Source: Takakia lepidozioides (taxonomy: Eukaryota > Plantae > Bryophyta). From it: a DNA stretch of 64,000 bases. Below the pieces are notes generated by a model. That model did no database searches. It was not told where the DNA came from and was given only the letters and a program-made list of their open reading frames with translations. Positions 3,679 to 59,400 of the stretch are shown piece by piece. The translations under genes were made by a program, and so were the position numbers. The DNA is taken from assembly GCA_030704615.1 (NCBI GenBank), contig CM060731.1, positions 12,834,001 to 12,898,000 on the forward strand, read 5' to 3'. Position 1 is the first letter of the stretch, and each line of letters begins with the position of its first letter.

Positions 3679-4059
3679 CATAGAAGACAATGTCAACTTA
3701 AGAAATTTTAGAAAGATTAAGTATACAAAATATTTAATTAATAACACTACCACCTAACAAAAATTGCATACCAAGCACTTTACCACCTTATAAGAGGTGA
3801 ACACCTAACCTTTTACATTACATTCAATGCTCTTAACCAACACACTACCCACTGCTTTTGAAAGCCTTGGAATTGTTTAATGTTTTATATGCATTACCAA
3901 TACCTAGGGGCACATCATGGCTCGGACCTACCGCAGCACCCCAGATCTAGCTATGGATATATGAGGCCTCCCGAAGGAAGCGTAAATATGGTGTCTCTTC
4001 ACCTCGAAGGGTTGCAGCCTTCCGTGAGGAAGGTGGATATCTTTGTGACACCAATCGGT

Positions 4060-4465
4060 AGCTCTATCTCCTTCTCTTCTGAAGGCATTGGGGAGGTTCA
4101 GGGTGGGCTCACATCGTCTGCAAATGGAACTTTATAACGTCCGCGGAAAGCTCAAAGAGCTTATGGGACAAAAGGGAAAAACAGGAAAGAAGAGAAAGCC
4201 ACAGCCAAAAGCAGCCCAGAAGCAACTACTGCTCAATGGATTGCCTAACGGCCAAGGCCTGATCATGCAGAAAAGCTGCCAAGCATTTCTGATCCTTGTA
4301 ATGGAAGACCTCTGTAAGAGATTGGGTATCCTGGAATAGAGAGTCCAATTTCCCATGGATCCCATAGTATAAATGGCAGTGAAAGAAGAAATGTTCTTCA
4401 CTTTCAATTCCCTGTAGTTCTTAGCGCAGGCGGCGGGCAGAGGCGGTCATCACGTTGGAGAGATC
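4060..4465. mobile_element. LINE family A 3' fragment with internal inversion
   Basis: 4060-4128 (+) encodes ALGRFRVGSHRLQM. 4128-4465 (-) carries the downstream CCHC region and family A 3' tail. Confidence 0.8.
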
Positions 4466-28399: not shown

Positions 28400-28843
28400 C
28401 GATGATCAGCTAGCTTGGCCATGATGCGATTGTGTGATACTGTAGCTGCCAACAAAGGTCGATTTATGGCTGGCCTTGGCATCCCCATGATGTTGATGTC
28501 CAACATAGGTCCAGCATAGGTGTCTGTCTGTGTGTCAGGTACCCTGCAGGTATGGACCCTTGGAATCTCTGACAAGGAGTTCTGTTTTCAGGAGCCTACG
28601 AGTGTTTTCAAGGCACCATTGTGGGTCCCATTGCTGTCTGCTGTGGCCTGGCTGCTTCAACGTGCATTTGGTGCTCATGAAGCAGTGAAAATCCGCCAAT
28701 CTTTGGTCGTCGGTTCGTAGAGCCACTTACGGTTCGCCGTTGGCCAACATAAGGCCGAATACAAACACACATACCTCCACCTGTCCCACAATGCAAAAAA
28801 TACATTCTGTAGCTGAGAGCTTTGTGGCCCATTCTGGGCTTGA

Positions 28844-29760
28844 GAAATGAAATGAAATGGGACTTCATAACGTCCGCGGGAAGCTCAAAGAGATTATGGG
28901 ATAAGCGGAAGAAAGAAACAAGAAAGAGAGAGGGGCCACAAACAGCCCAAAAGCAACTAAAGCTCAAGGGATGGTCTAGAGTCAACGCTTCATGCAGGTA
29001 AGCTGCCAAGCATTTCCCGATCCTCATAATGGAAGACCTGTGTAAGAGATTGAGATCGCCGCATAGACGATTCGATCTCCCATGGATCTCCTAGTATAAC
29101 GGGCAGTGAAAGAAGAGATGTTCTTCACTTTCACTTTCCTGTAGGTCCCAGTGCAGGCGGGGCATAGTCGGTCATGACGTTGCAGATTTTCCCAACTACC
29201 AGTCTCTATCCGCCGACTGTGGGAGCCCATCCTGAACCTCCCCAATGCCCTTAGAAGAGAGGGAGATAGAGCTAGAGACAGGTAACTAGGCCACAGATCC
29301 TATCGTCACGGAGAACCAAGAACGTCTCCTGATTGAATTGCAGTTTTCTTGGAGTGGCTGATTTCCATGTCGGCCTGATGTGCAATTCCATAAGTTCTCT
29401 TCTGATGCATCTATTGCGGTCCTGTTTGGAGGCAATATCCACCCCCTCCAAAGGAGATTGCGCTCAAAAAAGTTGGACACCCAAGCATACCGAGAGTGCT
29501 TGAAACCAGATGTTTTGAGCCTGATACATGTTGTGAGGGCCCGGGCTGTCAACCCTTTGGGTCGAAGGGCTAGTAACCTTGTAATAAGAAAGATTGTAAG
29601 CCGGAAGATGGCCTCAGTTTGAAGTGTGACGCATGCAATAATTGGTGACGTGTTGTCCTGCATTCGATCTCAAGCATTCGTGTTGTTCTGAGCTACCAGC
29701 CAATGTGCAATTTAAAGTTGGTTGTCAGAAATTGACAATATCTAATAAGGTACTTTAGTA
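28844..29760 (-). mobile_element. LINE family A, 5'-truncated (RTEX/L2-like ORF2 C-terminus)
   Basis: GRFRMGSH...IETGSWENLQRHDRLCPAC with a (CATTT)n tail at 28844. Confidence 0.85.
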
Positions 29761-29881: not shown

Positions 29882-30712
29882 CAGTGTTGGGCGGTTACCC
29901 GCCTGGGCCCCGGGTAACCGCCGGTTCCGGTTCCGGTTATGTGGAACCGGACCGGAACCGGACCCGCCTGTGCAGAACCGGAACCGGAACCGGAACCGCT
30001 CATTGGGGATTGTGTGGGAACCGGAACCGGCGGTTCCAGCTACGACCACATGTGTGGGAACCGGCGGTTCCAGCTCCAAAGCGGTTCCGGTTCTTGGTTC
30101 TTGACCCCCTGGTGGGGCTGGTGGGCCCAGGGAAAAACTTATTTAATGCTCTTAAGCTCCTGAGATCCTGGGTTCAATGCTTGAAGGCCATGAGATTCTA
30201 TGTTCAATGCTTCAGCGCCATGAGATCTTGGGTTCAATCTCCAGCTCCATGATATCCTGGCTAAGTTCATTAATAAAATGTTTGAAGATGCCAATACTTG
30301 CGAGGTAGCTGAATAGTACTTTCAACCCATAAAATTTTACCCATTTTCTTCTACCAGTTTATCTAGAGTATTTTTGTTTGTTTTTTTGTGTTAGTGAAAA
30401 CTAACAAAATCGTTGGATTTTAATTCAAATATGTGAATACACTGCTATTTAATCTACCGGACTGATAAAATATTTTAAATCTAATTAAATTAAACAAATA
30501 TATTTTTAAAATAGAACCGGAACCTAACCGGAACCGATGGTTTTTATCAGCAACTAACCGGTAACCGGAACCGCCCCCATGTTTAAAAGTTGGAACCGGA
30601 CCAGAACCGGCTCAATAAAAAAAACCGGAACCGGATCCGGAACCATCTCTTGAAATAATTTTGGAACCGGAACCGAAGGTTCCTTCACAAATGCAAGAAC
30701 CGCCCAACACTG
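29882..30712. mobile_element. Intact non-autonomous hAT element (MITE) with 8-bp TSD
   Basis: 15-bp TIRs CAGTGTTGGGCGGTT / AACCGCCCAACACTG. TSD CTCTACAC at 29874-29881 and 30713-30720. Dense GGAACC/GGTTCC subterminal repeats. Confidence 0.95.
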
Positions 30713-32739: not shown

Positions 32740-33452
32740 TCAAAGTTGCAGGTTTCAGGAACTCCTAGTATGCTCGAGTGGACAGTTTATTTCAACGCAA
32801 CGGACTCTCTACTGCTTCCCTATTACCAATGAATCCAGATGAGGTTGGACATCACATCCAGACATGACCGCAACAGACTCATTAGGAGAGAGCTTATGGA
32901 ATTACATGTCAAGAGAACTTGGAAGCTACCCAATTTCACGACAAATCTCCACTTCTATCGAGAGACATTCTTGGTGCTCCGAGATGATAGAATCTTGAGG
33001 CCAAACTACCTGTCAGCATCCTTATTTCCTTCCCTCCTGAGGGCATTGGGGCGGTTCAGGGTGGGTTCCCACAACCTACGGATAGAGACTGGCAGATGGG
33101 AAAACCTGCAACGGGAGGACCGCCTATGTCCAGCTTGCATAGGGCGCAGCCAAGAAATTGAAACTGAAGAACACTTCTTCTTCTACTGCCCTCTATACTA
33201 CGAGATCCGTGGGAGATTCCACTGTTTATTCAGTGGAGCCCAATCTCTCACTGAAGTCTTCCATTATGAGGATAAAAAATGCTTGGCAGCCTACCTGCAC
33301 GAGGCCTTCACCCTCAGACAATCGCTAGAACATTAGTTCTTATTCTTGGGTTCTGGTTTTGTTCCTCTCTCATGTTTTCTTCCATTTTGTCCCATAAGCT
33401 CTATGAGCTTTCTGTGGACGTTTTAAAGCACCATTTCATTTCATTTCATTTC
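32740..33452 (+). mobile_element. LINE family A, 5'-truncated
   Basis: RFRVGSHNLRIETGRW...CPAC...ETEEHFFFYC (CCHC) with a (CATTT)n tail ending 33452. Confidence 0.9.
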
Positions 33453-33453
33453 T

Positions 33454-34510
33454 ATGTCCTCGTCCAAACGCGAAAGAGATCGACGAGGATGGAGACTAGC
33501 CTTCACCCTCGCCTCACCCCGGGTCTCATCTGCTCTCATCTGTTTCTCCTTCCTGCCCCAGCCTCACAACAGGCTTCTCCCTTGCTTCAGTGCTCCACGA
33601 GAAGTGCTGATATTCAAATCCTCCGTGATCAAGTTATTATCCAGCAAACTCTCCTCACCCCGGGTCTCATTTGTTCTCATCTGTTTCTCCTTCCTGCCCC
33701 GGCCTCACAACAGGCTTCTCCCTTGCTTCAGTACTCCATGAGAAGTGCTGATAGTCAAATCCTTTGAGACATAGACTTGGAGAAGTCGTTGGCAGCTCGA
33801 GACACAGACTTGGAGAATCTGCGAGCTGAGGTCACCGTCCTGCGGGCCTCTCTTCTAGACAGTAATAGCAAATTGGAGGGTCTCTTGAAACAACTCAATG
33901 TGAAACCCACACAAAACATGTCTTTCCAAATTGGAAACTTTCCTAGCTTACCACTGACCCGGATGTTAAGGGCTTTGAAAGCCTGTTGTTGTTCCTCACG
34001 CAAGGTGGCTGAGACTGTCTCCTCTAAAGAGTGGGGACTCTTGTTGGATGTGCTGCCCTTGACTATATTAGCCCAAGAGGAAGCCTCTGCCTTATGATCT
34101 TGGAGCTCCCGGGCCATTGTAGGCATCGCAGCTTTGTGGGTTTCTAGCTCTTTAATAAGGATTTCCACCTGTTGATGAATGCTTGCCGTGAGGGGACTTG
34201 AGAGGTCCTTCCTTGTGAGGGTCTTCACTTCCCCATCCAGTTTGGAAAGACGTGTTTGTGTGATATTCACATTGAGTTGTTTCAACAGACCCTCTAGTTT
34301 GCTATTGCTCTCTAGAAGAGAGGCCCACAAGACGATGACCTCAGCTCGCAGATTCTCTAAGTCTGTGTCTCGGGCTGCCACCAACTTCTCCAAGTCCATG
34401 TCTCAGTCTGCAAGCCGCTTCTCCCAGTCCTTGTCTGGGGCTACAAGCAATTGCTGCAGAGCCTTCTCGGAGATGCATCAAGTTTGCAGGATAGTAACTT
34501 GATCACGAAG
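33454..34510. mobile_element. Two convergent LINE ORF1 fragments (33454-33905 +, ~33945-34510 -)
   Basis: Coiled-coil followed by SWANIVK...EEQQQAFKALNIRVSG, like L2/CR1-type ORF1. 140-bp inverted arms and a 111-bp direct duplication. Confidence 0.65.
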
Positions 34511-40533: not shown

Positions 40534-43500
40534 TTAAAACTGGCTGTTTAATTTGGCAAGTGAGCTCAAGAGCTGGACAAGGTTCTGAGGGCATTCATAG
40601 CGCATATAGAAGACTGGGCAAACCCAGTTTGTGCAAAGGATGGGCTGGAAATGGCCTCCCGAATGGCAGCGCATACATTCTGCAAGTGCTCTGGTGAACT
40701 TCTTTTCCTGTTCCCTCACCTCCAGGAAGATTCCATTTGCCGCACTCTGTGCAGCTCCTGCCAGGGCACAATCTTCACACAATGCTGGCTTATCATCTTC
40801 CATAGGTTTCCTGCATTGTGCGAGCCAAATAAGCCACAGACACAGCACAGATCGCACAGCAGCACTCAACAAAAATGAGAATGACAACTTCAGTTTCAGA
40901 TAGTGCTTCCATAAAACTTCGGAAAGAGGAAGATACCGGCAATTGAGGCAGGGGGACTTAGGTCGGAAGAAGCTGCTAACTAAGGCCTGTGTGCGGTGCG
41001 AGGCACTCATTGATGCAGATGGAGGAGGAATGGTGTGGCTGCCAGTGAAGAGCTCTCGCAGCGTTGCTGAATCTGTGACATGCTCCAATATCTACCCCAC
41101 CACAACAATCAAAATTGAACGGGCCTAATCTTAAGAGTGCTCCCATCCTTCCCTTCCCCCTCGCCGACAGCTTATTTTTCCAAATCTGGAAAACCAGCTC
41201 AATCAAGTATCATCACCCTCTGCTATTACAATCAGGTCACCTATATCTCCCTTTTGATACATTTGCAGGAATACTTCATTAACCACTTTAGCATATCCAA
41301 AAGCACTTTAGGGCTGGCTTCAAATCACAAGTGAAACCACCTGTCCACAGGTGAAGAGGCTTTCGCACCTTGGGCCCCCAGCCATTAGTATTCCAATGTG
41401 GCCAAAACACCTCCACAACGACCCCTTCATGCACGTGGCTTACGAAGGAATGAGAATGTTACTCACAGATTCAAGAGGTTTGCGAAGCTTATTCTCAAGA
41501 TAGACATGTGTATTCACTGGTATGCCTCCACTCATGGCATCCACTGGGTCTTCCGCCATGTCATCCTGCCAGTCCCAAGTTAACTTTTGACTCAAGCGTT
41601 TGAAGTACAAATGCATCGTCTGATCTCCAGCCATGTCAGAATTTCTCACTTTATATGAATGGGAGGTGAAGGCCAGTAGCTGCCTTGTGCATACCATAGA
41701 TGCCCCTGAAATTGAAGAGAGTACAGATCTGACCTGAAGTTTGCTAGAGTTGGCAGCCAGGACAAAGGGTATTCGTTCCCCGATATGAAACTGCCGATCA
41801 GGATCTTTGCGTTTCAACCTTATGGCGAGCGCCACATGGGGGCCCCGACCTTCCTCTGCAGTGGATGGACCCCCAGTTTGCTTTTGGGGACTCTTGGTCA
41901 CTGCTGCTAGCCTTGCAATGTCATGGTCATCCACCCTCCAGAGACCCTGCCGTACCCACCTGATTCATTATTGTCATATAAAACCACTGCAATCTGCTTG
42001 GGCTGCTTTGCTGTGCATTCACCTAAGAAGGAAGAACTGAGGAGAAGGGTTAAATAGTGGAAGGGACACGAAATGAAATGAAATGGAATGGTACTTTATA
42101 ACGTCCGCGGAAAGCTCAAAGAGCTTATGGGACAAAATGGAAAAAATATGAGAGAGGAAACACAACCAGCGCCAAAAAAAAGCCCAAAAGCAACTACTGC
42201 TCAAGGGATTGTCTAAGGGTCAAGGCCTCGTGCAGGTAAGCTGCCAAGCATTTCTGATCCTCATAATGGAAGACTTCATTGAGAGATTGAGTTCCGCGGA
42301 ATAGACAGTGGAACCTCCCACAGATCTCATAACATAGAGGGAAATAAAAGTGTTCTTCAGTTTCAATTTCCTGGTTGTGCCCGGTGCAAGCTGGGCATAG
42401 GCGGTCCTCCCGTTGCAGGATTTCCCATCTGCCAGTCTCTATCCGTAGATTGTGGGAGCCCACCCTGAACCGCCCCAATGCCCTCAGGAGGGAAGGAGAT
42501 AAAGGCGCCGAAAGGTAATTAGGCCGCAAGATTCTATCATCAAGGAGAACCAAGAATGTCTCTTGATAGAAATAGAGCTTTGTTGTGAGATCGGGTAGCT
42601 TCCACGTTCTCCTGACATGTAGTTAAGTTCCCTTCTAATGAGTCTGTTGCGATCCTGTTTGGATGTGATTTCCACCCCTTCTGGATTCTCTGGCAATAAT
42701 GAAGCAGTAGAGAGTTCATTGCGCTCAAAAAAATGCAGGGAAGAATGATATATAGTGGGTCCTTGGGAAGTTTTTCTTGAGGCACTCCTAGGCATGCAAG
42801 ATAATTCTCAATCACGTGTTGTCAAAACATATGCCTCTGACTGTTATTTCCAATATGAACGTTTTGGAATCAGAACTTGTGTTACCCCAGTCATCAGCAA
42901 GTCCGAAAGGCTCCACTTGCCCGCAACCAGCCGGCGGATGGCATGCTTACAACTCTCCAAAGCACCCGCCACATCATTCTTCACAAGAATGTCAAAGAGT
43001 GCTTGTTTGCATATTGTGCGTACAAAGCCAGGCACATCCCTTCGTTCAGCTTCAATGCCGCGTACAAACAGAGTGCCTTGGGTGTCCTGGCCCTCACCTG
43101 CCTCACTGCTTCTGGTGAATTGCTTGCCCGCGTACCTATTGACCTGCTCCATGTTAGAGCCAACCTCTCAAATGTGAGAGCGAGTTGCACAGACATTGGA
43201 CTGTTGTTGCCCCTCCAATCAATGAATGAATAGTTTTCAGGTCCACAGGAAACACCACATATCTGCGGCCTCATGTCAAGAGGTGCATACTTGTCGGCTA
43301 AACATCATGACAAAACAGTGTCTCAAAAAGCCCTGCCTTGTACCATAAGTTGATGATTTTGACACCTAGCTTGTCCTCAACTGTACACGAGGGTGGGTTA
43401 GGGAGGGTGCTGAGAGGGTGAATGGTGCCTGCAGCCAGACAAGACATGAACAAAAATATGTTCAATCGTGTCTAATATACTTTTAATCTCTGCTTCTGTT

Positions 43501-46500
43501 TGCAACTTTGTATTGTGAACCACCTATAAATCACATGCACAGACTAAAACTAAAGTGATGTGCACAGAAAACGACCTGAAGCAGCAGGAATGGACACAAT
43601 ACCTGCAAGAAATAGAAGCATTAGTCAGAAATTTCCCCATGTAGCTTTTAAGCTCACAAGTCTTCATGTCTTAGGACCACAAAACACATTCTCCCACACA
43701 CCTTTCTATATATTGACCTACAGGATCAGCTTCTTATGGACTCATTTTCTTAAACTCATCCATAGATTCAGTTGGCCCTGAAAGCTATTTCATGCAAGGG
43801 ACAAACCCTCCAAGCATCCATGAATGGAGTGTGACCAAGACAAACTCGCAAATGCGACATATCTATACAGATATATATTCCAATCAATTCCTAACTGTAT
43901 GAGGTTATAAGCTTCTGAAAATCAAACCTTGAAATTTTCTCTCTGTTTCTCACCGTTCTGGTACCCTTCCATCTAACTTGTTCTTAACACGTTGATAATG
44001 TGAACAGACACAAGCTATAACCCTAATCTACACATGGAAAAAAGACCAGAAAGTAACTGCCAAGGCCTACTACGAACAGCAATGTACCAACATATACAAT
44101 GAATGCCAATCCCCAGTAACATTGATGGGTCCTTACCCGCTCAAATTTAAGGACCATAGGAGAAGGAAAGGCTTGGGACACAATGTCAGCTGCTTGGGTG
44201 CCCAAAGCAATCGCCTCGTCTATACTGGCCCCTTGGAATCGAATAAACACACTGTCAGTCTGAGCATAGATCACTTGTGCCTTCTCAAATGTGCTCCCCA
44301 CAAGCTCTACCGCTCGTTTACATGCAGCTGCCCCCATGCTGCATTCAAATAGAGGGGGTCATTGCCCTTGCAGGGGATGTAGACGCTGTTTATACAGTAT
44401 GATTCATTCATACTCTTCAAACATAGAATACACCTCTATATCTAAGGAGCTCTCCAGCTAGCAGGAGAAAGTTTGAAAAGGTGAGATACAACTCGTTATT
44501 AACTTCAAGAAATTGCACCCTCCAAGTTATATACCTGAGACAAGAGTCAGCCAAGGGCAGCGCCTGCTGGGGCGATGTACCTGCCCCTGTGAATCCATAT
44601 AGAGCATTTGAGCATAGCTGCATCATTAAAAAATCCCCGCCACAATCATCAATGTGCAAACCATTCATATAAGACTATTTACAAGATTTAGAACATCATG
44701 CTTGGCTCAAACTTAAAGAGAGGTTGTAAGCTGTTCTCAAATCTCATCAATACACTATGATGTAAGTTAATGTACTCTCTAGGCATCAACTGTAGCTCAC
44801 ATTGTTTGTAACTTGAAGTACAGATGGGATTTATGATCTACAGTTAGTCGAGGGAAGCACGACTTTCATGTGTAGGATTCCATTGGAGCAGGCCACAAGA
44901 AGTTGTTGTCCACCAGGCGACCAGTCCATGCATGTGATTGGCCCTGGTACCACCACGGCCTACTGACTGTGCTATTTGTGAGCCAGTCAACCCATCACAA
45001 CCACATAGCCTACTCGTTCAACATTACATAGTACTATGTTTCAACTACGGGCTGGAACGGGGTGTACTTCTGGTAATATATCTAACTATCTAGTGCTGAT
45101 ACAACTCAGAAGTTCACTATTTGTCCCCAGAAATTGAGACTCCGCAAGTCAATCCATCCGATGCTTCATAGCTTTTATCTTTAGTCGGCACAGGAAGTGT
45201 TCACCTTCTCACTTCTGATTACTACTTAGATGAGATTGAGCCGCTGCATGTGCACTGTATTAAACATGTACAACAATCAGGTAATGGTCTGGAATTTATT
45301 CTCAGGAACCAATTAACCTTGAGGGCCTTCTGCCTTCCATCCAGGACAGCTCGCTCTTCCATGCTCACATTATCAGCGGTCATTTGATCTCTTGCCTGTT
45401 TCCGCGCCCTGATTAAGGCTCCTATAAATACCACAAACATCCTGTATGAGCAGTGCGGAAGACAGAGTGCAACTTTATAACGTCCACAAGGGGCATAGAG
45501 GGCCCATGGCAGAAAGTATACTGACCAGAAACCACATCTTATTGAAGACCACACCCCTAGTGCCCTTCCAAATGCTGTCCTCAACTCTTCATATCCACTG
45601 TTATTTTGTTTGAGCGAGGTAAAGAAACTGGGGAAGGGGAGGGAGACAGACATACAGAGGTGGACAGTACCACATATACGAGGTAGGATTCCATGGCGGA
45701 GTGATGGCTTCACAAATTGAGCTCCATTTGGGCTGCTTGGACACACATCCAGAAATCCATGGACCAAAATATAAAGAAAGGTATTACTCTGCCTGCTTCT
45801 GAAGCTGTCATTTCCAAAACATTAAAGGCCTAGGAGGCCTCAATATGCCCAGCTGACAGGCATCCCTGCCATATGACTAGTCCATGTTTTTGATAGGCAC
45901 CAAATGGAGTGCAGTACTCCTTTGGTCCCTGAGCCTTCCAATCCAGGAAGAAAAGGCTTGTGAGGGATCCAAGTGAATACCACAGAATAAATTACTTGAT
46001 GCACCAGGCTATAGACATCTGACAAGAAAGTAAAACGCAAAAAGAATGAACCACTGCCAAAGAACTACTCAAGTGTGGGTCAAAGGCAGACTGCCTCAAG
46101 GAGGTAGGCTGCCAGGCAATTTGGATCTTCACAGCTAAAGACCTCAAAAACAAATGGATGGTAGCCAGCACTCACGAGGAGTCTAGAGGCATTCTTGGAT
46201 TCACGGCCTGTCAACTTATCTTGAAGTATTATGCATACTACGGCTCGTAAGAATGAAGTGCAACCACACAGAAACCTTGAAATAAAACCCCTGGAACCCC
46301 ATCCTCTTCTGTGAGTAGTAAGACACTCAAACATGGCCTGAAATTGTAAGCCTTTCACGGCCATTTGAAGGTTGAAGGTTCGTATTTCTTTTCCTAGAGA
46401 TCACAAGCGAGCACCTGGAAATCAAAAGATCATCGGGCAGCGAGCTTGCATCCTCCGGATGTACTAGGGTGGTGTAGCACCTGACAAACAGAGTGCATGG

Positions 46501-49500
46501 AGATCCTTAGGATGGTGTGGAAGCATTCTCAGATCAATGTTACATGGATAGTTCCCGCAAGCAGCAATGGTCTCATACTAATGGTCACCAACCAATCTTT
46601 AATTTCACTTGACAGAAACATGTGAAAGTAGAGATGAACAAGTTTCTCCAATTAGCAGAATTTGGCTTGTCCCTGAGCCTCTAAGCAGCAAATTCAGGGA
46701 TATCTGGTATCTATGCAGCCAGAGGGGACTCACAGGTTATAAGCCATGAAAATAGATGGGTAGAGAGATGCAAAGTCCAAAATAGTAACAGGGTCCTGCT
46801 CCTGCCATCCCCCCAGCTCCTCCACCTCAAAATAAACTCACGTGTGTACAAGAAAGCACCAAAGCAATTTTGCAACAACCTGAGTGTTGCAAAAACTGAC
46901 AGATCAAAGTCAGTACCTGATAAAACCCAGCCGTCTGAGCCTCCTTTGGATGAAGCAAGAAAGGGCTCTCCGATAGCTGCCCTGTTTCACATAATTCCAC
47001 AGGCCTGGGTTATGACAGTTTTTGGTCCAAGAGAATTTCCCTAATTAATGGTTACACTTCCACTTATTCAAGGCAATCTCAGTAAGTTCTGCACAATATG
47101 CTAAACAAGGTTGACTGTCATTGAGGACCCAAGGGGCTTCCACAGGAAACCCCACACACCTCCAGCACGTAGGCAAGTCTAGCAACTGATAACTAAATTA
47201 ATGCATAAGATGTTTGAAAAGATGCCACAAAATTTCAACACCAGATTTTACGGATGTGCTGGGAAGTGCAACATCCAGGTCTACAATAAAATAAGAATGT
47301 ATCACTAAGAGTGCACCAAGACCACCAACCAGTAATAGTGGAGAAATTACAAATTGCATGGTCCCTAGATCTGGCATCCTGCCATGGGACAAGGAAATCC
47401 ATTTTTCTTGAACTCACCACTTATTGCAGCCCCTCCAAGCAGCCATCCCTCTCTCCTTGCGCTCCGGAGAAGTAAGCTCTTCAGTCACAAGAAATTTTGG
47501 AGAAATGTACAATTCAGTTGACTGACAGCAAGTTGCTTGTAGCCAGAGTTTACCAATATTATGTCTTAGCATCCCAGACATAGCATTCTTACTCAGATCC
47601 CTTAATGGAAACAGGGACCAAATTTTCCACCCTGTTTAGTGAACAGCAATACGGTCTGAGCCTGTACCCTAGTCTCTCTGCACCACACCCATCCAACTGA
47701 ACTGTAAAAAGAAGGGTAAAATTGCATACGGTGGGATTCAGAATCTTTTATCACTTACTTGCACGCGCACCATTTGCGCTTTATAAAGGACTTCAGAGAG
47801 AGTCAGCCCAGTGACCCGGGCCATCTCTACTGTTTCGGGCACTGTTTGCAACCTCTCCATTAGCTTGAGTGCTACCTGCCACTATTCAACTTCATATGAA
47901 CACCTCAAGTGGTGTTTGCTAGCTCCTAAAGAGAAAACAACATCCAGTGAGCTCACACTGCAGCAAAAGCACCATGCAACCTATGACTGCCGATTACAAG
48001 ACAGTGGCCACATCATTTTGCAAACTCTGCTAATGCACAATGAGGTTGTTTGTTCTGGCATCCAGTCCAATGAAATTTTGCATCAGATATAGCCATCAGA
48101 AATAGAGCAACAAAACAATCAGCTTACCTCAGCTTCATGAAGTGAGTAAACCCACAGGCGAGAATGACCCCCATATTTGCCAGCCCAAAGCTCTGCCACC
48201 ATTACCGTTGATAGCACCTCTTTGGGAGTTCCTAAAAACAGCTGTGGACATGTACATTAATACCATAAGATCAAGAACTGCGTGGCCTTGACAGCAGTGT
48301 TCGTCCTGATCTGATAGCTTACTGGACTAGCTTCTAAATCTTTTCACTTCTCCACAAGGGAACCGATTGCACTGAAAGGTGCAGGAATTAAATTTCACCT
48401 CCAGCAATCTGATTGAGCGATCTATATATCGAATAAACAAGGCTGCAAGACATCCCCACATAAGTGATGACCTGGACTGAGTGGAATCGTATTTTGATGT
48501 ACCTGTCATTATGCACATTTGGAGGCTCAAAGGATATTTTCATCATGGAATTACAAAAGCAACCTGAATTCTGCATAATCTACCATTGTGGATCACATAC
48601 ACAACAGTCATGAAGAAATGACAACAGGCAGAGCAGGGCAGGAGGTGGCTCTTTAGGATTAGTTAGTTTATCCCCTTTCTGCCATTGATAAACTCAAATG
48701 AAGTTCAGCATCATTTAAAACTTCATAAGCCTTGACTGAAGCACTGGGACAAGGTCAACTACAGAAACAAAAGAAGTCGTACCAATCAATCCAGTACAGA
48801 ATAGCAAGCCTTGTCTTCAACTACGATCCGCAATTAGTCATACAAACCTAGAACCATCGCTCAATCTTAAGAATGATAATTTTTTACCAAATCAAGATTT
48901 GAAACCAACCCAACACCTGGAACCATGGAGAAAAGGCACGAATGCAAATATCTCACCTGTGAACACTCTGCTAGTGTGAATGTAGAGAGGTTGAAAGCCA
49001 CAAGGATCACACGAAGCATGTCAATCACTAGCCTGCCCTCAACAGATGCCCGGAACACCTCCTGGTTGGATGTTGATGACATGCGTGCTTGCTGCTTTAC
49101 CCAATGTTTCCCATATGTCACCACTGACTTTACCTGCCATTGGAAAAAGACAAAATGAGATTTTATAGATTCCACATTAGAACATATCTATGCGAGAGCC
49201 TACTAAATCTAATCTGAGGTAGCCAAAGATTATAATAACAAATTTCACATTAGAACTGTATCATAGCTGACACAACTACAGTGTATCTGTGACCTATGCA
49301 ATAGAGTGTGCTGATAACACAGGTTAGGCATGAAATAGCAATGAATACTGGTGTTCATCACTATCTGCTAAATGCATGGAGACTTCCATAACAAGACATG
49401 CAGTCTGTAGTGGAGTTAATAGAGACAGAAACCTCAATAGATTGGCCTTTGCGCCGGCCAATATCAAGAGGTCCTAGCTTCAGCACTTTGAATCGCTCAG

Positions 49501-52500
49501 CCAGATACCGCAAACTATCCTTCAATTGAAATACACACACAACATCTGGATCCACCTCCCAATAGAAAAACTCACGCCATGCCATTAGCATAGGAGTCTC
49601 TGTCTCATACTTCCGCACCTCCACTCCTGGTAATCTCCCTTGGGACAGATTCCTACCATGGGTGAAAACTACCTGTTTTGTGCCATCCTGGAACCCCCTA
49701 AAGCAAAGGATGTGGGATATAATAAGGACTGGATCTCTTGATGGGAGGGCTGACCCTCCCCCAGCAATACTGTCAAGGTCCTCAATGTCCCCCACCCGTG
49801 CTTCATCATCCTCAGAGGGGCCCAATCCTAGGCTATCACGTGTCGTACCTCTTTTAGTTGGGCTTGTCAAACAATCAGCTCTTGCTCTCCCTTTCACTCT
49901 TCTTGAAAACTGCCGACCACTACTGGTGCTAAGTTTTGCCCCACCAGACACAATTCTTCCACCTCCCGCACACTGCACATGGAGGGCTACAATTCGTAGT
50001 GGGGATATTAAAGACCATGTGGAGTTGTCCAAGCCTGAAGCCAAACCTTTTGGGACCCTCATAGGTGTGCTTGTCTCTACTAGGCTACCAGCAGGGTCCA
50101 CTTTAGATTTTGCCTCCGCTAATCCTTTGTTATCTCGCAGAAAAATCTCCTCTTCTTCGTCATCTTTGTCAAAAAGCATATCCCGATTCTCTGCCAAGTC
50201 TGTGCCAATGACCCCAGGAGATGTTTGTGGGGGGACCTGAGAGCCCTGATTGTTCTCAGTGAACTCCATGTGATATGTAGCATCAGGTGTCAAACCAATC
50301 AGGTTGCGCCAGCCCACCATGAGCTCCTTGGAGCAGCGTGTCTTCTGCTGATTGTGAGGTACAGACTCTGCTTGCTTGATTTCCACCCAGGAGCCCCCAG
50401 CAATCGAGGTGTCGCAAAAGAAGCGCATCCCTAGCTGCCAAATGCATAAAACTTCCTGAATGATAAAGCTGGTTTACACTCTACTATGAGAATATTTCCG
50501 ACTCTTTTGTCAAAATATGAAGAGATTTTGCCTAAAACAAGTTACACCTCCCTTGGAAGACACCCCTAGTGATTGCCTGCTAAATATTGGGTCAAGGAAA
50601 CTGACCATGTTCCACACTTAGTGTAGCATACAACCTCATGGGGAGAATCACCCATTTCCATCCAGAACAATGACAAACTTGTCATTGCACGTCCCTTTAT
50701 GATTGAAACTCTCATTTAAAAAGTCCAATAATCCTCTAGCCGTAACCATAACAGTGTGCAAGGATACCTATGAACCTAGAAAGTTACAATAGAGGTTTAG
50801 CTTAGAACAGACTTTGATGCCCTCCTCATAGGAAGTGTGGTCCTTCCAGACAATGCCATGGCTTTGCAATCCGTTACTCTCAGCCAACACAGTTATCTCC
50901 TTGGCAACCACCTCCACATCTTTGCCTCTCCATACTTGTACCTGTGATGAGCGATTCCAACAGTCACAGACTACAAGCGTATTCACCAATACACTTATTA
51001 CTCTCTTCTTCTTCTTCTACTGCCCTCTATACTACGAGATCCGTGGGAGATTCCACTGTTTATTCAGTGGAACCCAAACTCTCACTGATGTCTTCCACTA
51101 TGAGGATCAAAAATGCTTGGCAGCCTACCTGCACGAGGCCTTCACCCTTAGACAATCGCTAGAACATTAATTGTGGTTTCTGGATTTGTTCCTCTCTCAT
51201 GTTTTCTTCCATTTTGTCCCATAAGCTCTATGAGCTTTCCGCAGACGTTATAAAGCACCATTTCATTTCATTTCTCTTCAATCTCTTCCTATGCCCCATG
51301 GATATTGAATTATTGTCTCTCTTTCTTCCTGGGAAGCCCACTACTTGTTCTCTTTCTAATTTCATCCATACCATGCTTCTTTGACCTTCCCATATCATAA
51401 AGTTCCTTTCTTCATTCATACTTTCTCTTTTCAACCGTCACATTGGCTCTTTGTCCTCCCGCACTCAACAACTTAATTTTCTTTCTTCTCTTGTTGTTCT
51501 ACTGTCCCCCCAGATCCAATTTCATAAACCAAATACCACATCACAACCTTGGCAAGCCAAAGCTGGCCTGACAGTGCCATCTGGCGCTGTCTATCTGGTT
51601 TACATTTTTTAGCTCTCTGTTTCTGTGCTTTTACTGTTTGTTTTGTCTGTGGTTATTAGTTATTCTATTGTGTCACCCTTTCAAACCTCCTGTGGATGTG
51701 ATAATTTTCTTTCCTTCTTCTCTTTTCTACTTTCCATGGGCCCTAAGGGTCTCTGTGGACGTTGTGAAGGTTTCTTTCGTTCTTCTTTCTTCTATGAGTC
51801 CTTTTGGGCAAAAATAATTGGAAAATTGGAAAGAAACGTTCACATATTTCTTCTTCACATGTCAAGCATCCAACCCTAGTTTCATGAAAGCATGGGGTAC
51901 CTTCAAGAAAGGATAAGTCCCGCCGCGACGGTAATACATTAGCGGTGTCATGTCAGCGAGTGAAATTCCAGCCACCTGCTACAGAAACACCTGCTAAGCC
52001 AATCCATCTTTTTCCAGATACTCGAGGTGGTAACCCAACACATGAGATTGACCGTACATAATCACCTATTAAAGAGGAAGTTTTGACTCACTGAAGGTCA
52101 TGTTTCGTATTAATGTCAGCAACTCTCATCCTCGACAATTTGTCCAGGAAAAGAATGCACTCATAAGACGCTGTTAGCAGTAGCCTTGTGGCCATAGACC
52201 CCGCACCCAGTTTGGGCAGAAAAGATAGAAGAATTTGTCCAGGGAAAGATATGATCAACAAGAAACCAGTAATCTCAACTGGGAATGCTCCTCCCATTCT
52301 TGTTTAGGGTTTCTTATGGTGGATTCTGTTTGCAAGATAAAGAGTCAACACCTAGATCAAACCTACCTCTACCAATTCACAACCTTGCAAGTCAAGAAAT
52401 GTGATGGCAGGTGGGGACCCAACCCTGGTCAGCGATCGCTGTCCCAATCAGAAAAACAGCTGCGTCACTCACATTATAGGCCTGATATCCGCAGACTGAC

Positions 52501-54696
52501 ATCAGGGATACCCGCTTGTGCAAATGACCACTTGGTTTCGTGGTCACACCCTCGGCCATGAGACTAGGGGTTTGCATGCCAGTTGGTATAAACTACTGAG
52601 GCCCATACAGTAGTACTTTCCTGGATTGCAAAAAAATCAACAGCAATTGACGTATTGTGGGCTGATTTGACACCCTACTCCTCGAGTGTGAAGCAGTTTT
52701 CAGGGTCGTTATCTTTCTTCATCAGATACTACCACTCCATTGGCTGCCAGCCAGGGCACTCCACACAACTGAGTCATTAGGAGGGACCAGAGACCTGGTT
52801 GACCACCTTCCTTGCAAATTGCACTGTATAGTGACACAAGACTTCCCCACTCAATCTACCCCCGGCCGTCATACTTACGAAGAATGAGAGGAACAGGCTG
52901 ATTCAAAGAGGTCTCAGGAGGGTCTACATACTAGAAACATGGAGCCCCGAGAGACAACCCATCAATTCTCTGAATTCTACAGGGACAATTTCCTTGAAAA
53001 CAGGGATAACTGCATGATTATGCCTTCCTACCTCTTGAGGATGGTCTGTAAGCAACACCGAGAGGCTACAATCTGTCACGTCTGCATGTTGCAGGCAGTG
53101 GCAACGGAGCAGCACTTTTTCTTATCCCCTCTTGTATATTATGAGATCCAAGAAAGATAATATTATCTCCAATCTTTCACAGAAGCTTTCAGCCTCAGAG
53201 ATCCAAAGTGCCGTGGAGCCTACATGCTTGAGTACCTCCTACAATTCTTTCTTTCATTCGTTCTCTGGGCACATAGACTGTTTTGGCTTCTTGTGGACGT
53301 TAGGAGGAACTTGTTCACACTCAGACGTGCCTGACATCAAATCACCCACATGGACAGTTTATATTATCAGCACAACAGTGTGAAGAGCTCACAACTTGGT
53401 TTGTAGAGGCAGCATTCTTCTTGCGGCTGGCCTGGACAGAGCGATTGAGATTCTCCATGACAATCCCTAGATTCCCCTCCTTTATTGCTGCTTCCTTTCC
53501 TTCTTCCAGACACATGGGAGCTGGGAACCAGAAGTAGGGCAAAAAATCTGCTCCATTTGATGCACTTGTGATTGTTAGACATGTATACCAGTAGGCCTTG
53601 AATCTGAAAAGTAAAACAGTCCTTGGGTACATAATGAATTAAGTGCACATTGCTTAAACCCCATTGGAGATGGCACCATCTGACAGACGAAGGCATGACG
53701 CATGCAATTGCTTTCACCCTCCAGCTTAGATTTCATTCTAGTCTTCAAATTGGATCATGTCACGTTCTCACAGACAAGTGGAGAAAGGTGAATACCATTG
53801 CACAGAAAGTGCACAGTAGGAGAAGACTTTATATCGAATGGATCAATTGAATGAACAGTGACAGTTAAAGCACCATTAACTTCAATAGCTCAGAGCAAGG
53901 TTTGTTGTTGTTTGGAATTTTCATTAGACAATGTGAAAAAGCCCTCGGATGTCACAAATTGTCAATAACATGTAAAAAGCAGTTTAGGGTTTTTACATGT
54001 TAAGCAAGTACTTTCTCAGCTCCAGACATTCCCACCCAGTTGGAACAAAGTAGATTGTGATAAAAGAGGACACATTGTGTATCCACAAGAGTTAAGGGTT
54101 TAACAGCATATCTTAAGGAAAATACTCAAGTTGTGTCAGGAGGTGTCATGCAACAGGCCATAATTCAGTCCCGTGATTTTGACATGAAAGTCAGCTCTGA
54201 GACTTCATAGGCACATGTACTGGAACAGCTCCAGACATCACAAATTATACGAATTTAAACTTTTCCGGGGGGGTGAAACCAACGGGATTTATTGCTACGG
54301 CCTCTTGCTACCCAAGGAAGCAGGAAAAGTCCCGTCAAATGTTCGAAAAGTCCAGACTTTGCAATGTCACTCGAGTTTTTGTGGAGGAACAAATGTCCGA
54401 GCTACTTCTGTGGCCTGGTTTTCTGGAGATATAGGCCCATTGTCCATAATTGCTCATGACAGGGATGAATCAGAGCATCGCCATAACTCAGGGACTATTC
54501 CATGTAAGAGTATACATTTTGAATCCCAATTGAAAAGTTCAACACGGCAGCATCCTACCGTAGAGACACTTGTTACGACACACAATAAGAAAGATTGAGC
54601 ACAGTACAGAGGGAGGAGCAGCAGGCGAAGAAGGAGGAGCATCAGTGAAGACCGCATCCACCAACATCATTCGCACTACTCCATTTTCTGCATCCA
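40534..54696 (-). CDS. Divergent DNA polymerase delta catalytic-subunit-like protein (family B), ~21 resolved exons; 5' end uncertain
   Basis: Delta-like N-terminal exons (DFLPYFWF, MYYRRGGTYPFLK, MRFFCDTSIAGGSW), EMARVTG, motif A LDFASLYPS, motif B KLCSNALYG, motif C YAQTDS, RGIEAERRD, GERIPFV, CysA CLNC..CEDC, CysB CMRC..CTNWVC. Resolved exons from 53547 to 40534 splice in frame. Confidence 0.9.
42070..42815 (-). mobile_element. LINE family A, 5'-truncated, in a polymerase intron
   Basis: Same CCHC peptide and tail as 32740-33452. Confidence 0.9.
51008..51274 (+). mobile_element. LINE family A 3' end in a polymerase intron
   Basis: FFFYCPLYYEIRGRFHCLF... nearly identical to ~33175-33450, with (CATTT)n tail. 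Confidence 0.9.
52155..52231 (-). mobile_element. Short LINE family B 3'-tail insertion
   Basis: TAGCCTTGTGGCCATAGACCCC core. Flanked by a near-perfect repeat AATTTGTCCAGG(A/G)AAAGA. Confidence 0.75.
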
Positions 54697-56431
54697 TCTC
54701 CCTGCTCGTTTTATCACCTTCCGCAAAATCCTTCTCTGTCTCTGGGATGGGAGCAGTAAAATTAAAAACGAAATCGAGAGCTAGCTTTCCAATCCCTCTG
54801 GCAGTACATACGTGCGTGCCAGATTGAAAAACACAGAATTAGCTCAATTTGATCTTCAAAAATCTACTCCGACATAGTCAACAGATTTCCCATAAACATC
54901 AGGTTGATGAAGCGTCAAAAGCTTCAGCTACGGACCGGCCACAATACAAGCACAGAAAAACAGAAATATACTGCTCCGACTCCATCTTCCTCTATAAAAT
55001 TTCAACGAGAACATCTGGAAGGAATTGAAATGGAAGCCACTCTACGAAAATCCACTTGGAAGTTCTGAAGAAAAACCAAGGGAGAAAGAAGGAAACGCTG
55101 TGCGACAGTGAGGCTTCATGAATCAGGCGGCACGCAGACACACAGACGTGGAGGGATGATTCATCCAACGTAAGATTCAATTCGTAAGGATTGTGGATGA
55201 AGGCAGCATTGAGTCATTAAAATGACAGAGCTATCAACAGCCAAAAGTGCATTCACATTCATTGGGACATGTTCTTAGGCATCAAGTTATTTTCTTTTTT
55301 GCATGGAGTGAGGTGCATATTAGCACTTTCAAAATGTTCTTCCACAATTGGGCTTCACCACCAACCATGAAAAAACACTGAGCCACAAATAGAGAAGTCA
55401 CTTCTGCTGTCACAGAGCAAATTGAAAAGAGATGGACAGATCGACACTTGGCCTTGAAGAAGGAAGAAGACCACACCACAGCCGACAAGGTAGCAGGATT
55501 TGGACCCAGAATCACATGGATGACACTCAAGAACAAGGTAGACAGGTATAGCAACATGCAATCAACCACCCTCCTGCATTCAGAGGGCATTCCGTTGCAA
55601 GGGCTGCGCTTTGGGTTTGCATAGAATGGGTACATGGAAAGGCCCATTGAAGCTCATGAGACATGTTGCATAGGTTTCATTGTCTGCCACTGCCAGTATC
55701 TTCTCAAACAAACATTCTCAAGGAAACTGAAAGTATTCAAAGCATGCACAAAGAATGTGTAACTGGAAAAAAAAACTAGGGGAGTTTCCTACAACGGTGG
55801 GGGGAGTACTGGTCTATCAATGAAGACTCAGTTGGTTTGGTAGACGTGGGGGTAGCTGTTGGGGTAGAACTCTTAGGGTTATTGGCAACAACTTGTTCAA
55901 AACCATACTATGTCACTAAGTGAATATCAGGCTGGTCTGGTTTTCCATACCAGTGCAACCCTATATACCAGTACAACATTGGTATGTGCCCATTACCATT
56001 GGGCTACAACTTGTCTCTCTCCCCTCACTATAATTAAATGGCCTGATCATGTGAGCGATCACTCCCTCGTGTTTGCCATTGAAAAAGACTACTAATGGAA
56101 AGAAAGAAAAAAAGGAAAACAAATCCAAGCGTATATGTTTTAGCTCAACACTTGCAGCTGCTATATGGTGATGAAGCAGATAATGCTTAGAAGAGCATTA
56201 CTTCTGACGGGAGAGTGCAGGTCATCAGTTGGTGCTAGCCTCCCACACTCACCAGATATACTTTTTTACTTCAGATCATGATGCACTGTTTTCAAATTGG
56301 CATATACAAATGGATTCCTTGAAGTTCAACTTCCCCACACTATGTCAGTAGATGGGAGAAGTATTGGGAGCCTGTAATCCTTCCATATCAACAGACTAAA
56401 ATCTTGATATGTCCGTATTGGTTGGACCACC

Positions 56432-59400
56432 TTATGGATTGTTGAGCTTTTCTATGCCTTGCTTGCCACTGGGAGTAGGATCTAACGTGTACCGACCAAG
56501 TTTCCCAGTCCTATACAGTTTGATTAGTTGCTTCGAAACCCGTACCCATCCAGCCTCACCAAGCTCTGCTGGAACTTTAAATAATCTTCGAAGCACATTC
56601 ATTTGTGCATCCACCAAGCTTTCCATATCCTCTTCATCCTCCAACTTCCCATCAAACTTTACCCGGGCTTGGGCCAAGGCTTCTCGCGCGCTTACGGCAT
56701 GGCAGGAATCCACGTCCTGAGAATGCAGACACATGTGGATCTCAGTGCGTAAGTATACCAGATATAATCACATTCCAACAGATTAATTCCCCACCAAATG
56801 AGGAGATGAAAGGAGATGAAAAATTTTACCTAGAGTGATCTACTATTAAAAACATTGAACTGCTTGCGCACCTAGTAAGTGCTGCAGGAAGGTTTCGGGG
56901 TTCCCACATTGGCTGATATAGAGATCCCAAGTTACTAGAAACATTTAAAATTGAGTGTAAAGGTTTGAATTTCACTCCATCCAAGAATACTAGTAAGTCA
57001 GCCGAAGAGCTGTACACATACATTAACGTTTAAAAATGACAGTGATTTCCTTGGCATTTGCACAAATCACCAAAAGCAGGAATACATTGACAAAAGAGTA
57101 GTTCAAAATTACTTCCGACCTCCACCAACTCTTCCAAATTGCATTCCTGCAGTGTCCAGCTGTGTACAACATGATCACAAAGGGTATCAAAGAGAAATCG
57201 AGCTGTCCTTCTTGGGGGGCAAGAAACCAAATTGTTGTGACCAGCATTCTTGTCCATGTGCACATATGTTTGTGTGAGAGGAGGTGCGACCATCATAGGG
57301 GCACGGGAAGGGGAAATAGAATGTCCTCATAAGAAGTTGTTTGCCGTAGCCTTGTGGCCATTGACCCCGCGCCCAGTTTGAGCGGAACACAAAGGGACAG
57401 AACCTACCTCTGTCAGGGGCTGATGTTGGTAGTAAGACTTACCTTGATACAAAAAATTGATCCGGGTTTTCCAGATATCCTCTAGAAATCCCTTCACACA
57501 AGCATCAATCTGATGTGTGTGATTTGCCCAAAAACTAGGCCTCAGAAGGACCTGGGCTTTTGGCTCAGCAAACAGATTGCGATGACTGCAATGACTGTCA
57601 AAGTTGGTAAACAGAGGTACAGGCACAATTCACTTGATAGATTTGAAGAGAGCGTCTCTTTGGTGAGAGAACCCCGGACAGTGTATCAGAAAATGAATAT
57701 TGTCTTCAGGTTGCCCACACAATGGGCAATTGCACTCTCCCTTTCCTCTCTGCTTCTGTTTGCTGTTCAAAGGTAGGCTTCCTGCCCTGAGTTTAAATTT
57801 CAGTCTAGTGCCGAGAGTGGGTAGACCCTTGAGGTCATCCAAGCTGTCCTCCCCCATGTCACAGACTGGAAACAAGTTCAGGGAAGTTTTCTGCCTCATC
57901 AGACAATTTCATGGCAAGAGACATGGCTTTGGACACTACAGCCTCTAAGTCAGATTTATCCAGTAGGCTCAAGACTTGCGGATCCAGATCCAGGTCCTTG
58001 AGAATCTCTTCTACTCCATTTTGTCCCATAAGCTCTAAGAGCTTTCCGCAGACGTTATAAAGCACCATTTCATTTCATTTCATTTCTCTTCTGCCAGGAC
58101 TTAGCCTGTTTGACAGGGCGGTCCTGTTTCCAAGATATAGAGTCGATTAACTTAGGATATCTGGTGTTGGACATATGTTGCAGCTGACCCCGCCATCTGA
58201 CCTTCAATTCATCTCGTCGGGAGCTTAAGGATGGGATGCCAAACTCACCCCAAACAGCCACATTGGCTGTTTTGGAGCATGCTGACATGCACTCCTTAAG
58301 CACCCCCACTTGAATGGATCCTAGAGACTTAGCCTGGTTGGAGTTATCAACCCATATTGCAGATCCGTACTCCAAGGCAGGTCTAATAACGCGACAAAGC
58401 ATGGTTTTCTTAACCTCAGAGTAGAAATAGGGGGGTAGAAATAGAGAGAGAAGACAAGTGGATAGGTGATGAACCTCAGATTGGTTGCTAAGCTCAACCT
58501 TCCTTCGAGAAAGTACCGATCTGCTATTCAGCAGCGATAGCAAGTAGCGTGCCACTCGTTCCTCACCCACCACAGAATCTTTCACTGCCCCTACATGCAC
58601 CAAAAAAAAAGGTTGATGCCTACCAAAGTGAGTGTTAAATATGGTTTCTCTTCACCCCGAAGGACTACTGCCTTCTGTTGGGAAGGTGGACACCTTCTAG
58701 CGGCCATAACCGGGGCAACGAAGTTGCCCAAACCTCCCCCAAGGACTCAAAAGTTCCAAGTACCCAACATTAAGTAACAAGTTGACCCGGGACCCCCCTT
58801 TTCATGGCTCCATTGACTATGATCGGTGACATCCAACATACACGCATGGCGCCAAAGGGGGAGAGAATCCTTATAGACAGGATAGAATTGAAAGAAAAAA
58901 CCCAAAGAATAAATCTAAAGACCCAACGAGGAGAGCAAATGAGAGAGGACTAAGACAGAAAGAACCAAGCATTATAACCTCCATTGGGGAGCCATTAGAT
59001 AATGTAGAGCAAGAAAACGACATCAAAAGATTCCAGATCTTGCACTGGACAAGAGCCTGCCTACCACTTCTGTCCTCAATGCCTCTGCCAAAGACAGGAA
59101 TTCTCTAAGGACCAGAGTGTATGTGGGGCAGTTGAAAAAGAGAAGATACTATGTTTCTACTACTTGGGACAGGATTAAAGCCCTTGTGACGGATGTGGAG
59201 ACTTCCCAGAGAGGTAGGAAGACACAACTTCTTATCCTGATGACTAGGAAGGTGGCTTTGAAGAAAGAGGGAGAGAGCGAGAGCCAGAGCCAGAAATCAT
59301 ATACCTGTTAAGGTAAGTTTCAGGCCTGTCTCCGAATCACCTATATTGGGAACTAGCACACCTGGCGTGTCTAATACATACACACTAGGTCGTTCACCAA

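What the first reader, a model, noticed from the sequence alone, without database searches (positions are those of the whole stretch)
40534..54696. A second, proofreading-dead DNA polymerase delta: candidate specialised plant polymerase
Seen: a long multi-exon family-B gene whose resolved exons splice in frame with no stops. It is delta-like throughout (LDFASLYPS rather than the zeta-type LDFQSLYPS; no REV3-size insert; EMARVTG; CysA and CysB). The exonuclease carboxylates are all altered: ExoI ALHVQC for SFDIEC, ExoII VCVFQLKDS for GYNxxxFD, ExoIII YSLHE for YCLKD. Known: canonical plant POLD1 is highly conserved and keeps these motifs. Inference: this is a retained paralog, not the replicative enzyme, plausibly an error-prone, translesion or gap-filling polymerase. 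Its intact Fe-S tail could let it share POLD2/POLD3, as Pol zeta does. Surveys of B-family polymerases may already list a divergent delta-like group in green lineages; I cannot verify that here.
Basis: partly seen in the sequence, partly recalled or inferred. Interest (0 to 1): 0.9.

Follow-up and report, generated by a model that had tools for sequence, protein, structure and literature searches.

The report
Green-plant proofreading-dead polymerase delta paralog
Mosses, ferns and green algae carry an extra, ancient copy of the DNA-copying enzyme polymerase delta that has lost its error-correcting part, has a rebuilt active site and a strong clamp-binding tag, and (in a model moss) is switched on by DNA damage, so it looks like an overlooked DNA-repair polymerase that databases label as the ordinary enzyme.

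Summary
Confirmed and extended. A minus-strand gene (ATG 54697, stop 40534) gives 1168 stop-free codons from exon 3 onward over 20 GT-AG introns; 11 are seen spliced in public RNA-like contigs. All four exonuclease carboxylates are altered. The finding omits more: motif C is YAQTDS, KKRY is VNRY, the exonuclease hairpin has an invariant insert, and a strict PCNA PIP box (QALVSSFF) precedes CysA. These marks define one long-stemmed clade across moss, lycophyte, ferns, charophytes, chlorophytes and one stramenopile. No seed-plant member was seen. Canonical POLD1 coexists in 11 species. It is delta-like, not REV3, not viral, and under purifying selection. The Physcomitrium ortholog, almost certainly Pp3c17_18800, is induced 5.5-fold by bleomycin and is SOG1-dependent; papers file it as 'POLD1b'. 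Best reading (0.55): an active, non-proofreading, PCNA-recruited repair or extender polymerase, convergent on archaeal PolB2. The main rival is a weak or inactive scaffold (0.2). 'Error-prone' is not shown. Caveats: a conserved 55-nt exon 2 is missing in this copy, and POLD1 in this genome was not located. The scan noted motif C on this same window only. No description of the family was found.

The parts
54608..54697 (-). Exon 1 (ATG at 54697; phase-0 donor 54607, as in moss orthologs). An unverified alternative donor at 54558 would restore the frame without exon 2.
53549..54607 (-). Intron region where the conserved 55-nt exon 2 should lie; no homologue above shuffle level
53393..53547 (-). 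Exon 3, N-terminal domain (phase-1 acceptor 53548)
   Evidence: homology
51901..51975 (-). Exon 4, N-terminal domain
50813..50941 (-). Exon 5, N-terminal domain
49433..50434 (-). Large exon: end of N-terminal domain, two low-complexity inserts, dead ExoI (49987-49970) and ExoII (49540-49514)
   Evidence: Pfam PF03104; RNA
48957..49133 (-). Exon with the family-invariant hairpin insert W-V-x-x-Q-x-R-M-x-x-T-S-N-Q-E (49103-49059)
48128..48241 (-). Exon ending in dead ExoIII (YSLHEAE)
47759..47875 (-). Exon with EMARVTG
47418..47478 (-). Exon
46917..46981 (-). Exon
46734..46801 (-). Exon with intact polymerase motif A (catalytic Asp, Leu, steric-gate Tyr)
46415..46480 (-). Exon
45671..45732 (-). 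Exon
45318..45421 (-). Fingers exon, first half of motif B (RQKALK)
44535..44617 (-). Second half of motif B (LCSNALYG)
44137..44338 (-). Palm exon with altered motif C YAQTDS (44268-44251). A minor acceptor at 44232 skips the motif and frameshifts.
43576..43602 (-). 27-nt exon, same size in Physcomitrium
42886..43143 (-). Exon with VNRY in place of KKRY (43143-43132) and RGIEAERRD
41734..41946 (-). Thumb exon
41467..41565 (-). Thumb exon
40937..41091 (-). Exon with strict PIP box QALVSSFF (40989-40966) and the first half of CysA
40534..40810 (-). Last exon: rest of CysA, CysB (Fe-S motif), stop
   Evidence: Pfam PF14260

Best explanation
This is the bryophyte-type member of an ancient, separate subfamily of Pol delta-type B-family polymerases. 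It most likely works as a damage-induced, non-proofreading repair polymerase. It docks on PCNA through its strict PIP box and probably binds the Pol delta B-subunit through CysA/CysB. It would extend mismatched, lesion-paired or recombination primer ends that proofreading Pol delta would chew back. The second motif-C Asp and the motif-A Asp would hold the metals. Loss of the first Asp and of the KKRY lysines would loosen the check on the primer end, and the invariant hairpin insert would form a new template or partner contact. Shown: gene, splicing, motif pattern, clade, coexistence with POLD1, purifying selection. From papers: damage induction of the moss ortholog. Inferred: activity, substrate and partners.
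For: Motif A Asp/Tyr, motif B R/K/N/Y and the second motif-C Asp are invariant in 35 aligned members while Exo residues scatter. Strict QxxhxxFF/Y PIP box in 26/36 members against 0/185 POLD1; human POLD1 has only an atypical PIP at this place (PMC7048817). CysB intact in 34/36. dN/dS against Physcomitrium about 0.1; both exonic RNA variants are synonymous. Pp3c17_18800 is up 5.5x with bleomycin, while the two canonical POLD1 ids are absent from that list (PMC4990234); it sits in the SOG1-dependent gamma-ray cluster 8 (PMC8711748). Precedent: archaeal Dpo2 lacks Exo and the first motif-C Asp (His instead) yet is an active mismatch extender (PMC8764526); six algal members also have His there.
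Against: No biochemistry. The second KKRY lysine is Asn in every member, and K706A nearly abolishes RB69 polymerase (PMC4333401). Mutating the first Asp lowers activity in Pol alpha and two viral enzymes. One canonical POLD1 is also in cluster 8, so that cluster is not specific. Dpo2 copies undamaged DNA accurately, so the analogy does not imply error-proneness. The match of the moss ortholog to Pp3c17_18800 is by elimination and chromosome position, not by sequence. Exon 2 is missing in this copy.
Confidence: 0.55

Rival explanations
1. A weak or inactive pseudo-polymerase that binds primer-template DNA, PCNA and the B-subunit as a scaffold, fork protector or competitor of Pol delta after damage.
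For: Two DNA-contact elements needed by replicative PolBs are replaced in every member: first motif-C Asp and both KKRY lysines; chlorophytes also change VRRD to xWRQ. The PIP box is strengthened and an invariant new surface exists.
Against: Metal ligands, dNTP-binding residues and the steric gate are invariant across Viridiplantae, which a pure scaffold should not need; Dpo2 was called dead on the same grounds and proved active.
Confidence: 0.2
2. An active polymerase specialised for something other than lesion extension, such as D-loop or strand-displacement synthesis in homologous recombination, long-patch gap filling, or use of unusual templates.
For: Induced by double-strand-break agents together with HR genes. 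Exo-deficient Pol delta displaces strands more strongly (general knowledge). The hairpin insert could act as a wedge.
Against: No direct test. Pol zeta and Pol eta genes are induced in the same data, so the expression does not pick out HR.
Confidence: 0.17
3. The family is real, but this particular copy is damaged or mis-assembled at its 5' end. Loss of exon 2 makes the exon 1 to exon 3 join frameshift. This can hold alongside the other readings.
For: Exon 2 is undetectable; the direct join stops after 52 codons; a minor isoform skips motif C.
Against: The remaining 1168 codons are intact, the terminal branch is short (0.13 against 0.24 for Physcomitrium), transcripts are correctly spliced, and a donor at 54558 could restore the frame. 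An assembly deletion is possible.
Confidence: 0.2
4. It is a divergent REV3, the only POLD1 of these organisms, or a captured giant-virus PolB.
For: Exo-dead like REV3; long stem; REV3 could not be placed in my trees.
Against: Delta scores twice zeta. Physcomitrium has a separate REV3 and two canonical POLD1. None of the 80 best viral hits has a Q/H-type motif C; those where the motif was read are canonical YGDTDS, at 25-29% identity. The delta-type C-terminal domain is present.
Confidence: 0.03

Closest known systems
Eukaryotic DNA polymerase delta catalytic subunit (POLD1/Pol3)
   Same: Domain order, fold (Foldseek best hits, TM 0.70), motifs A and B, EMARVTG, CysA/CysB, PIP position, size about 1200 aa.
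   Different: Only 33-34% identical to land-plant POLD1. Exo carboxylates lost, YxQ/HTDS, VNRY, an invariant hairpin insert, strict rather than atypical PIP, mostly different intron positions (2 of 20 shared with Klebsormidium POLD1 against 5 with the Klebsormidium paralog).
Pol zeta catalytic subunit REV3
   Same: Exo-dead B-family enzyme with a delta-type Fe-S tail; damage-induced.
   Different: No REV3-size insert, half the profile score, motif A of delta type; REV3 keeps YGDTDS (general knowledge); a separate REV3 gene exists in Physcomitrium.
Archaeal PolB2 (Sulfolobus Dpo2)
   Same: No proofreading, first motif-C Asp replaced (His; six algal members also have His), damage-inducible, coexists with the replicase.
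   Different: Separate lineage, 555 aa, Exo domain largely deleted, no C4 tail; a convergent analogy, not membership.
Physcomitrium 'POLD subunit 1b' Pp3c17_18800 (XP_024401114; annotated POLD1-like)
   Same: Ortholog: 66-68% identity, 19 of 20 intron positions shared exactly.
   Different: Named as an ordinary POLD1 copy in papers and databases; its altered sites were not mentioned in the passages I read. It has the exon 2 that this copy lacks.

Membership tests
Canonical POLD1 | NTD-Exo-Pol-C4 architecture and Pol delta fold | tested here: met
   Pfam; PDB profile; model of the lycophyte ortholog and Foldseek
Canonical POLD1 | Four exonuclease carboxylates (ExoI D,E; ExoII D; ExoIII D) | tested here: not met
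   H, Q, S, E in the window; ExoII and ExoIII Asp absent in all 26 aligned members
Canonical POLD1 | YGDTDS and KKRY | tested here: not met
   YAQTDS and VNRY; 48/48 readable members have Q or H, 117/117 readable green POLD1 have D
Canonical POLD1 | Branches with POLD1 orthologs of its own lineage | tested here: not met
   Separate clade, support 100, while green POLD1 forms its own clade. Origin by duplication of the green ancestor's POLD1 is not rejected, AU p=0.14.
Canonical POLD1 | CysA, CysB and a PIP motif before CysA | tested here: met
   the PIP is strict rather than atypical
Canonical POLD1 | Binds POLD2/POLD3 and PCNA; processive, proofreading synthesis | not testable with these tools
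   needs biochemistry
Pol zeta (REV3) | Inactive exonuclease domain | tested here: met
Pol zeta (REV3) | Closer to REV3 than to POLD1; large REV3 insert | tested here: not met
   634 against 322 bits; exo region 99 against 37 bits; Foldseek order; length about 1215 aa
Pol zeta (REV3) | Placement inside the REV3 clade in a tree | not tested
   no REV3 sequence was available by reference
Archaeal PolB2 / Dpo2 (works-like) | No proofreading motifs and first motif-C Asp replaced | tested here: met
Archaeal PolB2 / Dpo2 (works-like) | Descent from PolB2; short protein without C4 tail | tested here: not met
   delta-type fold and C-terminal domain
Archaeal PolB2 / Dpo2 (works-like) | Mismatch-extender activity | not testable with these tools
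   needs kinetics
Giant-virus PolB | Nearest relatives in viral contigs | tested here: not met
   best 80 viral loci are 25-29% identical, none has a Q/H-type motif C, and those in the trees branch outside the family

The most novel reading that the evidence does not exclude
This is a fifth nuclear B-family DNA polymerase lineage of eukaryotes, as distinct in role from Pol delta as Pol zeta is. It would be older than green plants (one stramenopile member branches outside all green members), retained for roughly a billion years in algae and seed-free plants, lost in seed plants, and convergent on the archaeal PolB2 extender through the same motif-C change.
Probability: 0.4. Interest if true: 0.9.

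Novelty: new variant of a known kind. Interest (0 to 1): 0.8.

Why it matters
Eukaryotes are taught to have four nuclear B-family polymerases (PMC7544198, PMC12198294). A conserved extra one, hidden under the POLD1 label in model organisms (Physcomitrium, Ceratopteris, Chlorella, Volvox), would add a component to DNA repair in green algae and seed-free plants. It is directly testable in Physcomitrium, where knockouts are routine. It offers a natural test of whether a B-family enzyme can work without the first motif-C Asp and the KKRY lysines. It may also mark a difference in repair between seed-free and seed plants.

Tried and rejected
Exon 2 search by exhaustive splice-site enumeration, protein profile and nucleotide alignment found nothing above chance; the GES-like stretch near 53720 scores p=0.15 against its best-fitting relative. 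A profile search for further family members added none. The ESM Atlas returned only generic PolB clusters. The viral scan gave only ordinary PolBs. The careful IQ-TREE run and the mixture-model AU test did not finish; quick trees and an LG+G4 AU test were used. SOG1-type motifs occur at 55274 and 55447 upstream, but at chance density (29 against 26 expected); rejected as evidence. Nine paper searches found no description of the family; the library lacks most subscription papers, so this is not proof. Look-ups in the scan's notes found no POLD1 or REV3 note for this genome, which says nothing about presence. The exo-dead Anaeramoeba Pol delta (P0017) branches with canonical POLD1 and is not a member.
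Full report
Observation. The gene lies on the minus strand, ATG at 54697 and stop ending at 40534. Single exons hit PF03104, PF00136 and PF14260. Two public RNA-like runs from two studies hold 0.27 and 0.21 of the words of 41000-50500; fully spliced exons would give about 0.24. Laid on 44150-50100, their contigs show 11 consecutive GT-AG introns, all in run X1 and 6 also in X2, and that path reads 706 codons without a stop. The runs are RNA by guess only, but spliced joints cannot come from genomic DNA. With homology-guided junctions the model from exon 3 to the stop has 21 exons, 20 GT-AG introns and 1168 codons. Nineteen of the 20 intron positions match the Physcomitrium ortholog exactly. 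A minor acceptor at 44232 skips motif C and frameshifts.

One defect. Physcomitrium and eight other bryophyte-like loci have a 55-nt exon 2. The window keeps the matching donor (54607) and acceptor (53548) but has no trace of the exon. A direct join stops after 52 codons; a donor at 54558 would restore the frame with a 16-residue substitute, but it is unverified. This concerns this copy, not the family.

Family. The largest exon retrieved full-length relatives. A search with the fern protein ranked about 49 family proteins almost entirely above ordinary POLD1: Adiantum, Ceratopteris, Diphasiastrum, Physcomitrium, Klebsormidium, Closterium, Chlorokybus and many chlorophytes. No seed-plant protein was among them, although angiosperm POLD1s fill the control search. 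Marchantia, Selaginella and Chara were also not seen, so losses or annotation gaps are patchy. Canonical POLD1 coexists in 11 species: Physcomitrium, Ceratopteris, Klebsormidium, Coccomyxa, Myrmecia, Tetradesmus, Volvox, Haematococcus, Bryopsis, Auxenochlorella and Ostreobium. A partial, intron-containing gene from the stramenopile Phaeothamnion carries the family signature. The window protein is 66% identical to the Physcomitrium ortholog and 33-34% to land-plant POLD1, so the source is probably a bryophyte (inference).

Anatomy. Exonuclease: ExoI D>H and E>Q, ExoII D>S, ExoIII D>E in the window. No aligned member keeps the ExoII or ExoIII Asp; about half keep the first ExoI Asp. Polymerase: motif A Asp, Leu and Tyr, motif B Arg, Lys, Asn and Tyr and the second motif-C Asp are essentially invariant. 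The first motif-C Asp is Gln or His in all 48 readable members and Asp in all 117 readable green POLD1. KKRY is VNRY throughout. Between ExoII and ExoIII there is a ten-residue insert relative to yeast and human Pol delta, with near-invariant W, Q, R, M, T, S, N, Q, E; by my knowledge of Pol delta structures this is the tip of the exonuclease beta-hairpin. Just before CysA, 26 of 36 members have a strict QxxhxxFF/Y PIP box and all 36 have its aromatic pair, against 0 of 185 POLD1; human POLD1 binds PCNA here with an atypical motif (PMC7048817). CysB is intact in 34 of 36.

Placement. The family profile scores 634 bits on human Pol delta, 322 on yeast Pol zeta and 165 on Pol alpha. A model of the lycophyte ortholog (pLDDT 79) matches Pol delta structures first. 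None of the 80 best viral hits has a Q/H-type motif C. In three trees the family is one clade with support 100 on a stem of 0.9-2.0 changes per site, and its internal order broadly follows the species tree. It does not join green POLD1 in the best trees, but that union is not rejected (AU p=0.14); the long stem leaves the origin unresolved. The trees used subsets of rows (74, 42 and 27) and contained no REV3 or Pol alpha. Selection: against Physcomitrium dN is 0.23 and dS 1.8-2.7 (saturated), a ratio near 0.1. The window's terminal branch is short, and both exonic variants in the RNA contigs are synonymous.

Expression of the ortholog. Physcomitrium lists three POLD subunit-1 genes, on chromosomes 6, 17 and 27 (PMC8711748). 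The two canonical proteins lie on sequences of 19.5 and 5.3 Mb; the family member lies at 12.66 Mb on CM009332.2 and spans 9.4 kb. By elimination, gene size and my recollection of the chromosome accessions it is Pp3c17_18800; I put this at about 0.9. That gene is up 5.5-fold with bleomycin, REV3 is up 4-fold, and neither canonical id appears in the supplement (PMC4990234). It falls in the gamma-ray, SOG1-dependent cluster 8, as does one canonical POLD1.

Mechanism. Most likely (0.55) an active, non-proofreading polymerase recruited to PCNA after damage, extending primer ends that Pol delta would excise. The closest working analogue is archaeal Dpo2: no exonuclease, first motif-C Asp replaced, long called inactive, shown to be a damage-induced mismatch extender with high insertion fidelity (PMC7390963, PMC8764526). 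The serious rival (0.2) is a scaffold, because the lysine replaced by Asn is nearly essential in RB69 polymerase (PMC4333401). A recombination or gap-filling role is next (0.17). Error-proneness and B-subunit sharing are inferences.

Novelty. Term searches in a PolB survey, a viral/eukaryotic PolB phylogeny and a plant polymerase review turned up no mention of the group, and the other paper searches found none. The proteins are public and annotated as POLD1 or POLD1-like. I class it as a new variant of a known kind: it fails POLD1 and REV3 membership but works, probably, like an extender polymerase.

Handling. Database searches used single exons by window reference, or the ids of fetched homologues. 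The joined spliced model was not submitted to any search or folding tool; that step was left out. It was built only inside local scripts and compared there with sequences already fetched. The structure prediction is of the lycophyte ortholog, not of the window protein.

Noticed in passing
window:44232-44338 (-): A minor alternative acceptor, seen in both runs, removes motif C and frameshifts; possibly unproductive splicing that limits the protein level.
   Followed up: partly
window:42070-42730 and 51008-51288; also 4050-4414, 28840-29300, 32790-33460, 57970-58090: Copies of one dispersed repeat family at 76-97% identity, two of them inside introns of the polymerase gene; the coding remnant looks like the end of a LINE ORF (my reading; no Pfam hit).
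   Followed up: partly
window:256-824 and 30154-30712: About 570 bp present twice in inverted orientation 29 kb apart at 97-99% identity, with a 30-bp tandem unit inside; a recent mobile element or inverted duplication.
   Followed up: no
window:37443-38744 (+): Intronless CDC123/D123 ORF, 433 aa, convergent with the polymerase gene.
   Followed up: partly
window:17993-19063 (+): F-box/kelch-repeat ORF, 356 aa.
   Followed up: partly
window:20548-22065 (+): Broken reverse-transcriptase ORF of a retroelement (PF00078).
   Followed up: partly
L086 (Phaeothamnion confervicola contig, protein P0013): A stramenopile carries a partial, intron-containing member that branches outside all green members; it suggests an older origin or a transfer. 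Single 4.9-kb contig, contamination not excluded.
   Followed up: partly
protein P0017 (Anaeramoeba flamelloides): An independent exonuclease-dead Pol delta copy with the same ExoI change (HVQC) and an intein in motif C; it branches with canonical POLD1.
   Followed up: partly
protein P0091 (EukProt): A family member of 1881 aa that also carries an endonuclease/exonuclease/phosphatase domain (PF03372); fusion or gene-model artefact.
   Followed up: no
L001:4001-6454: A giant-virus bin contig encodes a 1308-aa PolB with canonical YGDTDS and KKRY that branches near eukaryotic Pol delta on a long branch.
   Followed up: no
window:55274-55286 and 55447-55459: Two SOG1-type CTT(N7)AAG sites within 750 bp upstream of the ATG; window-wide density is at chance level.
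   Followed up: yes
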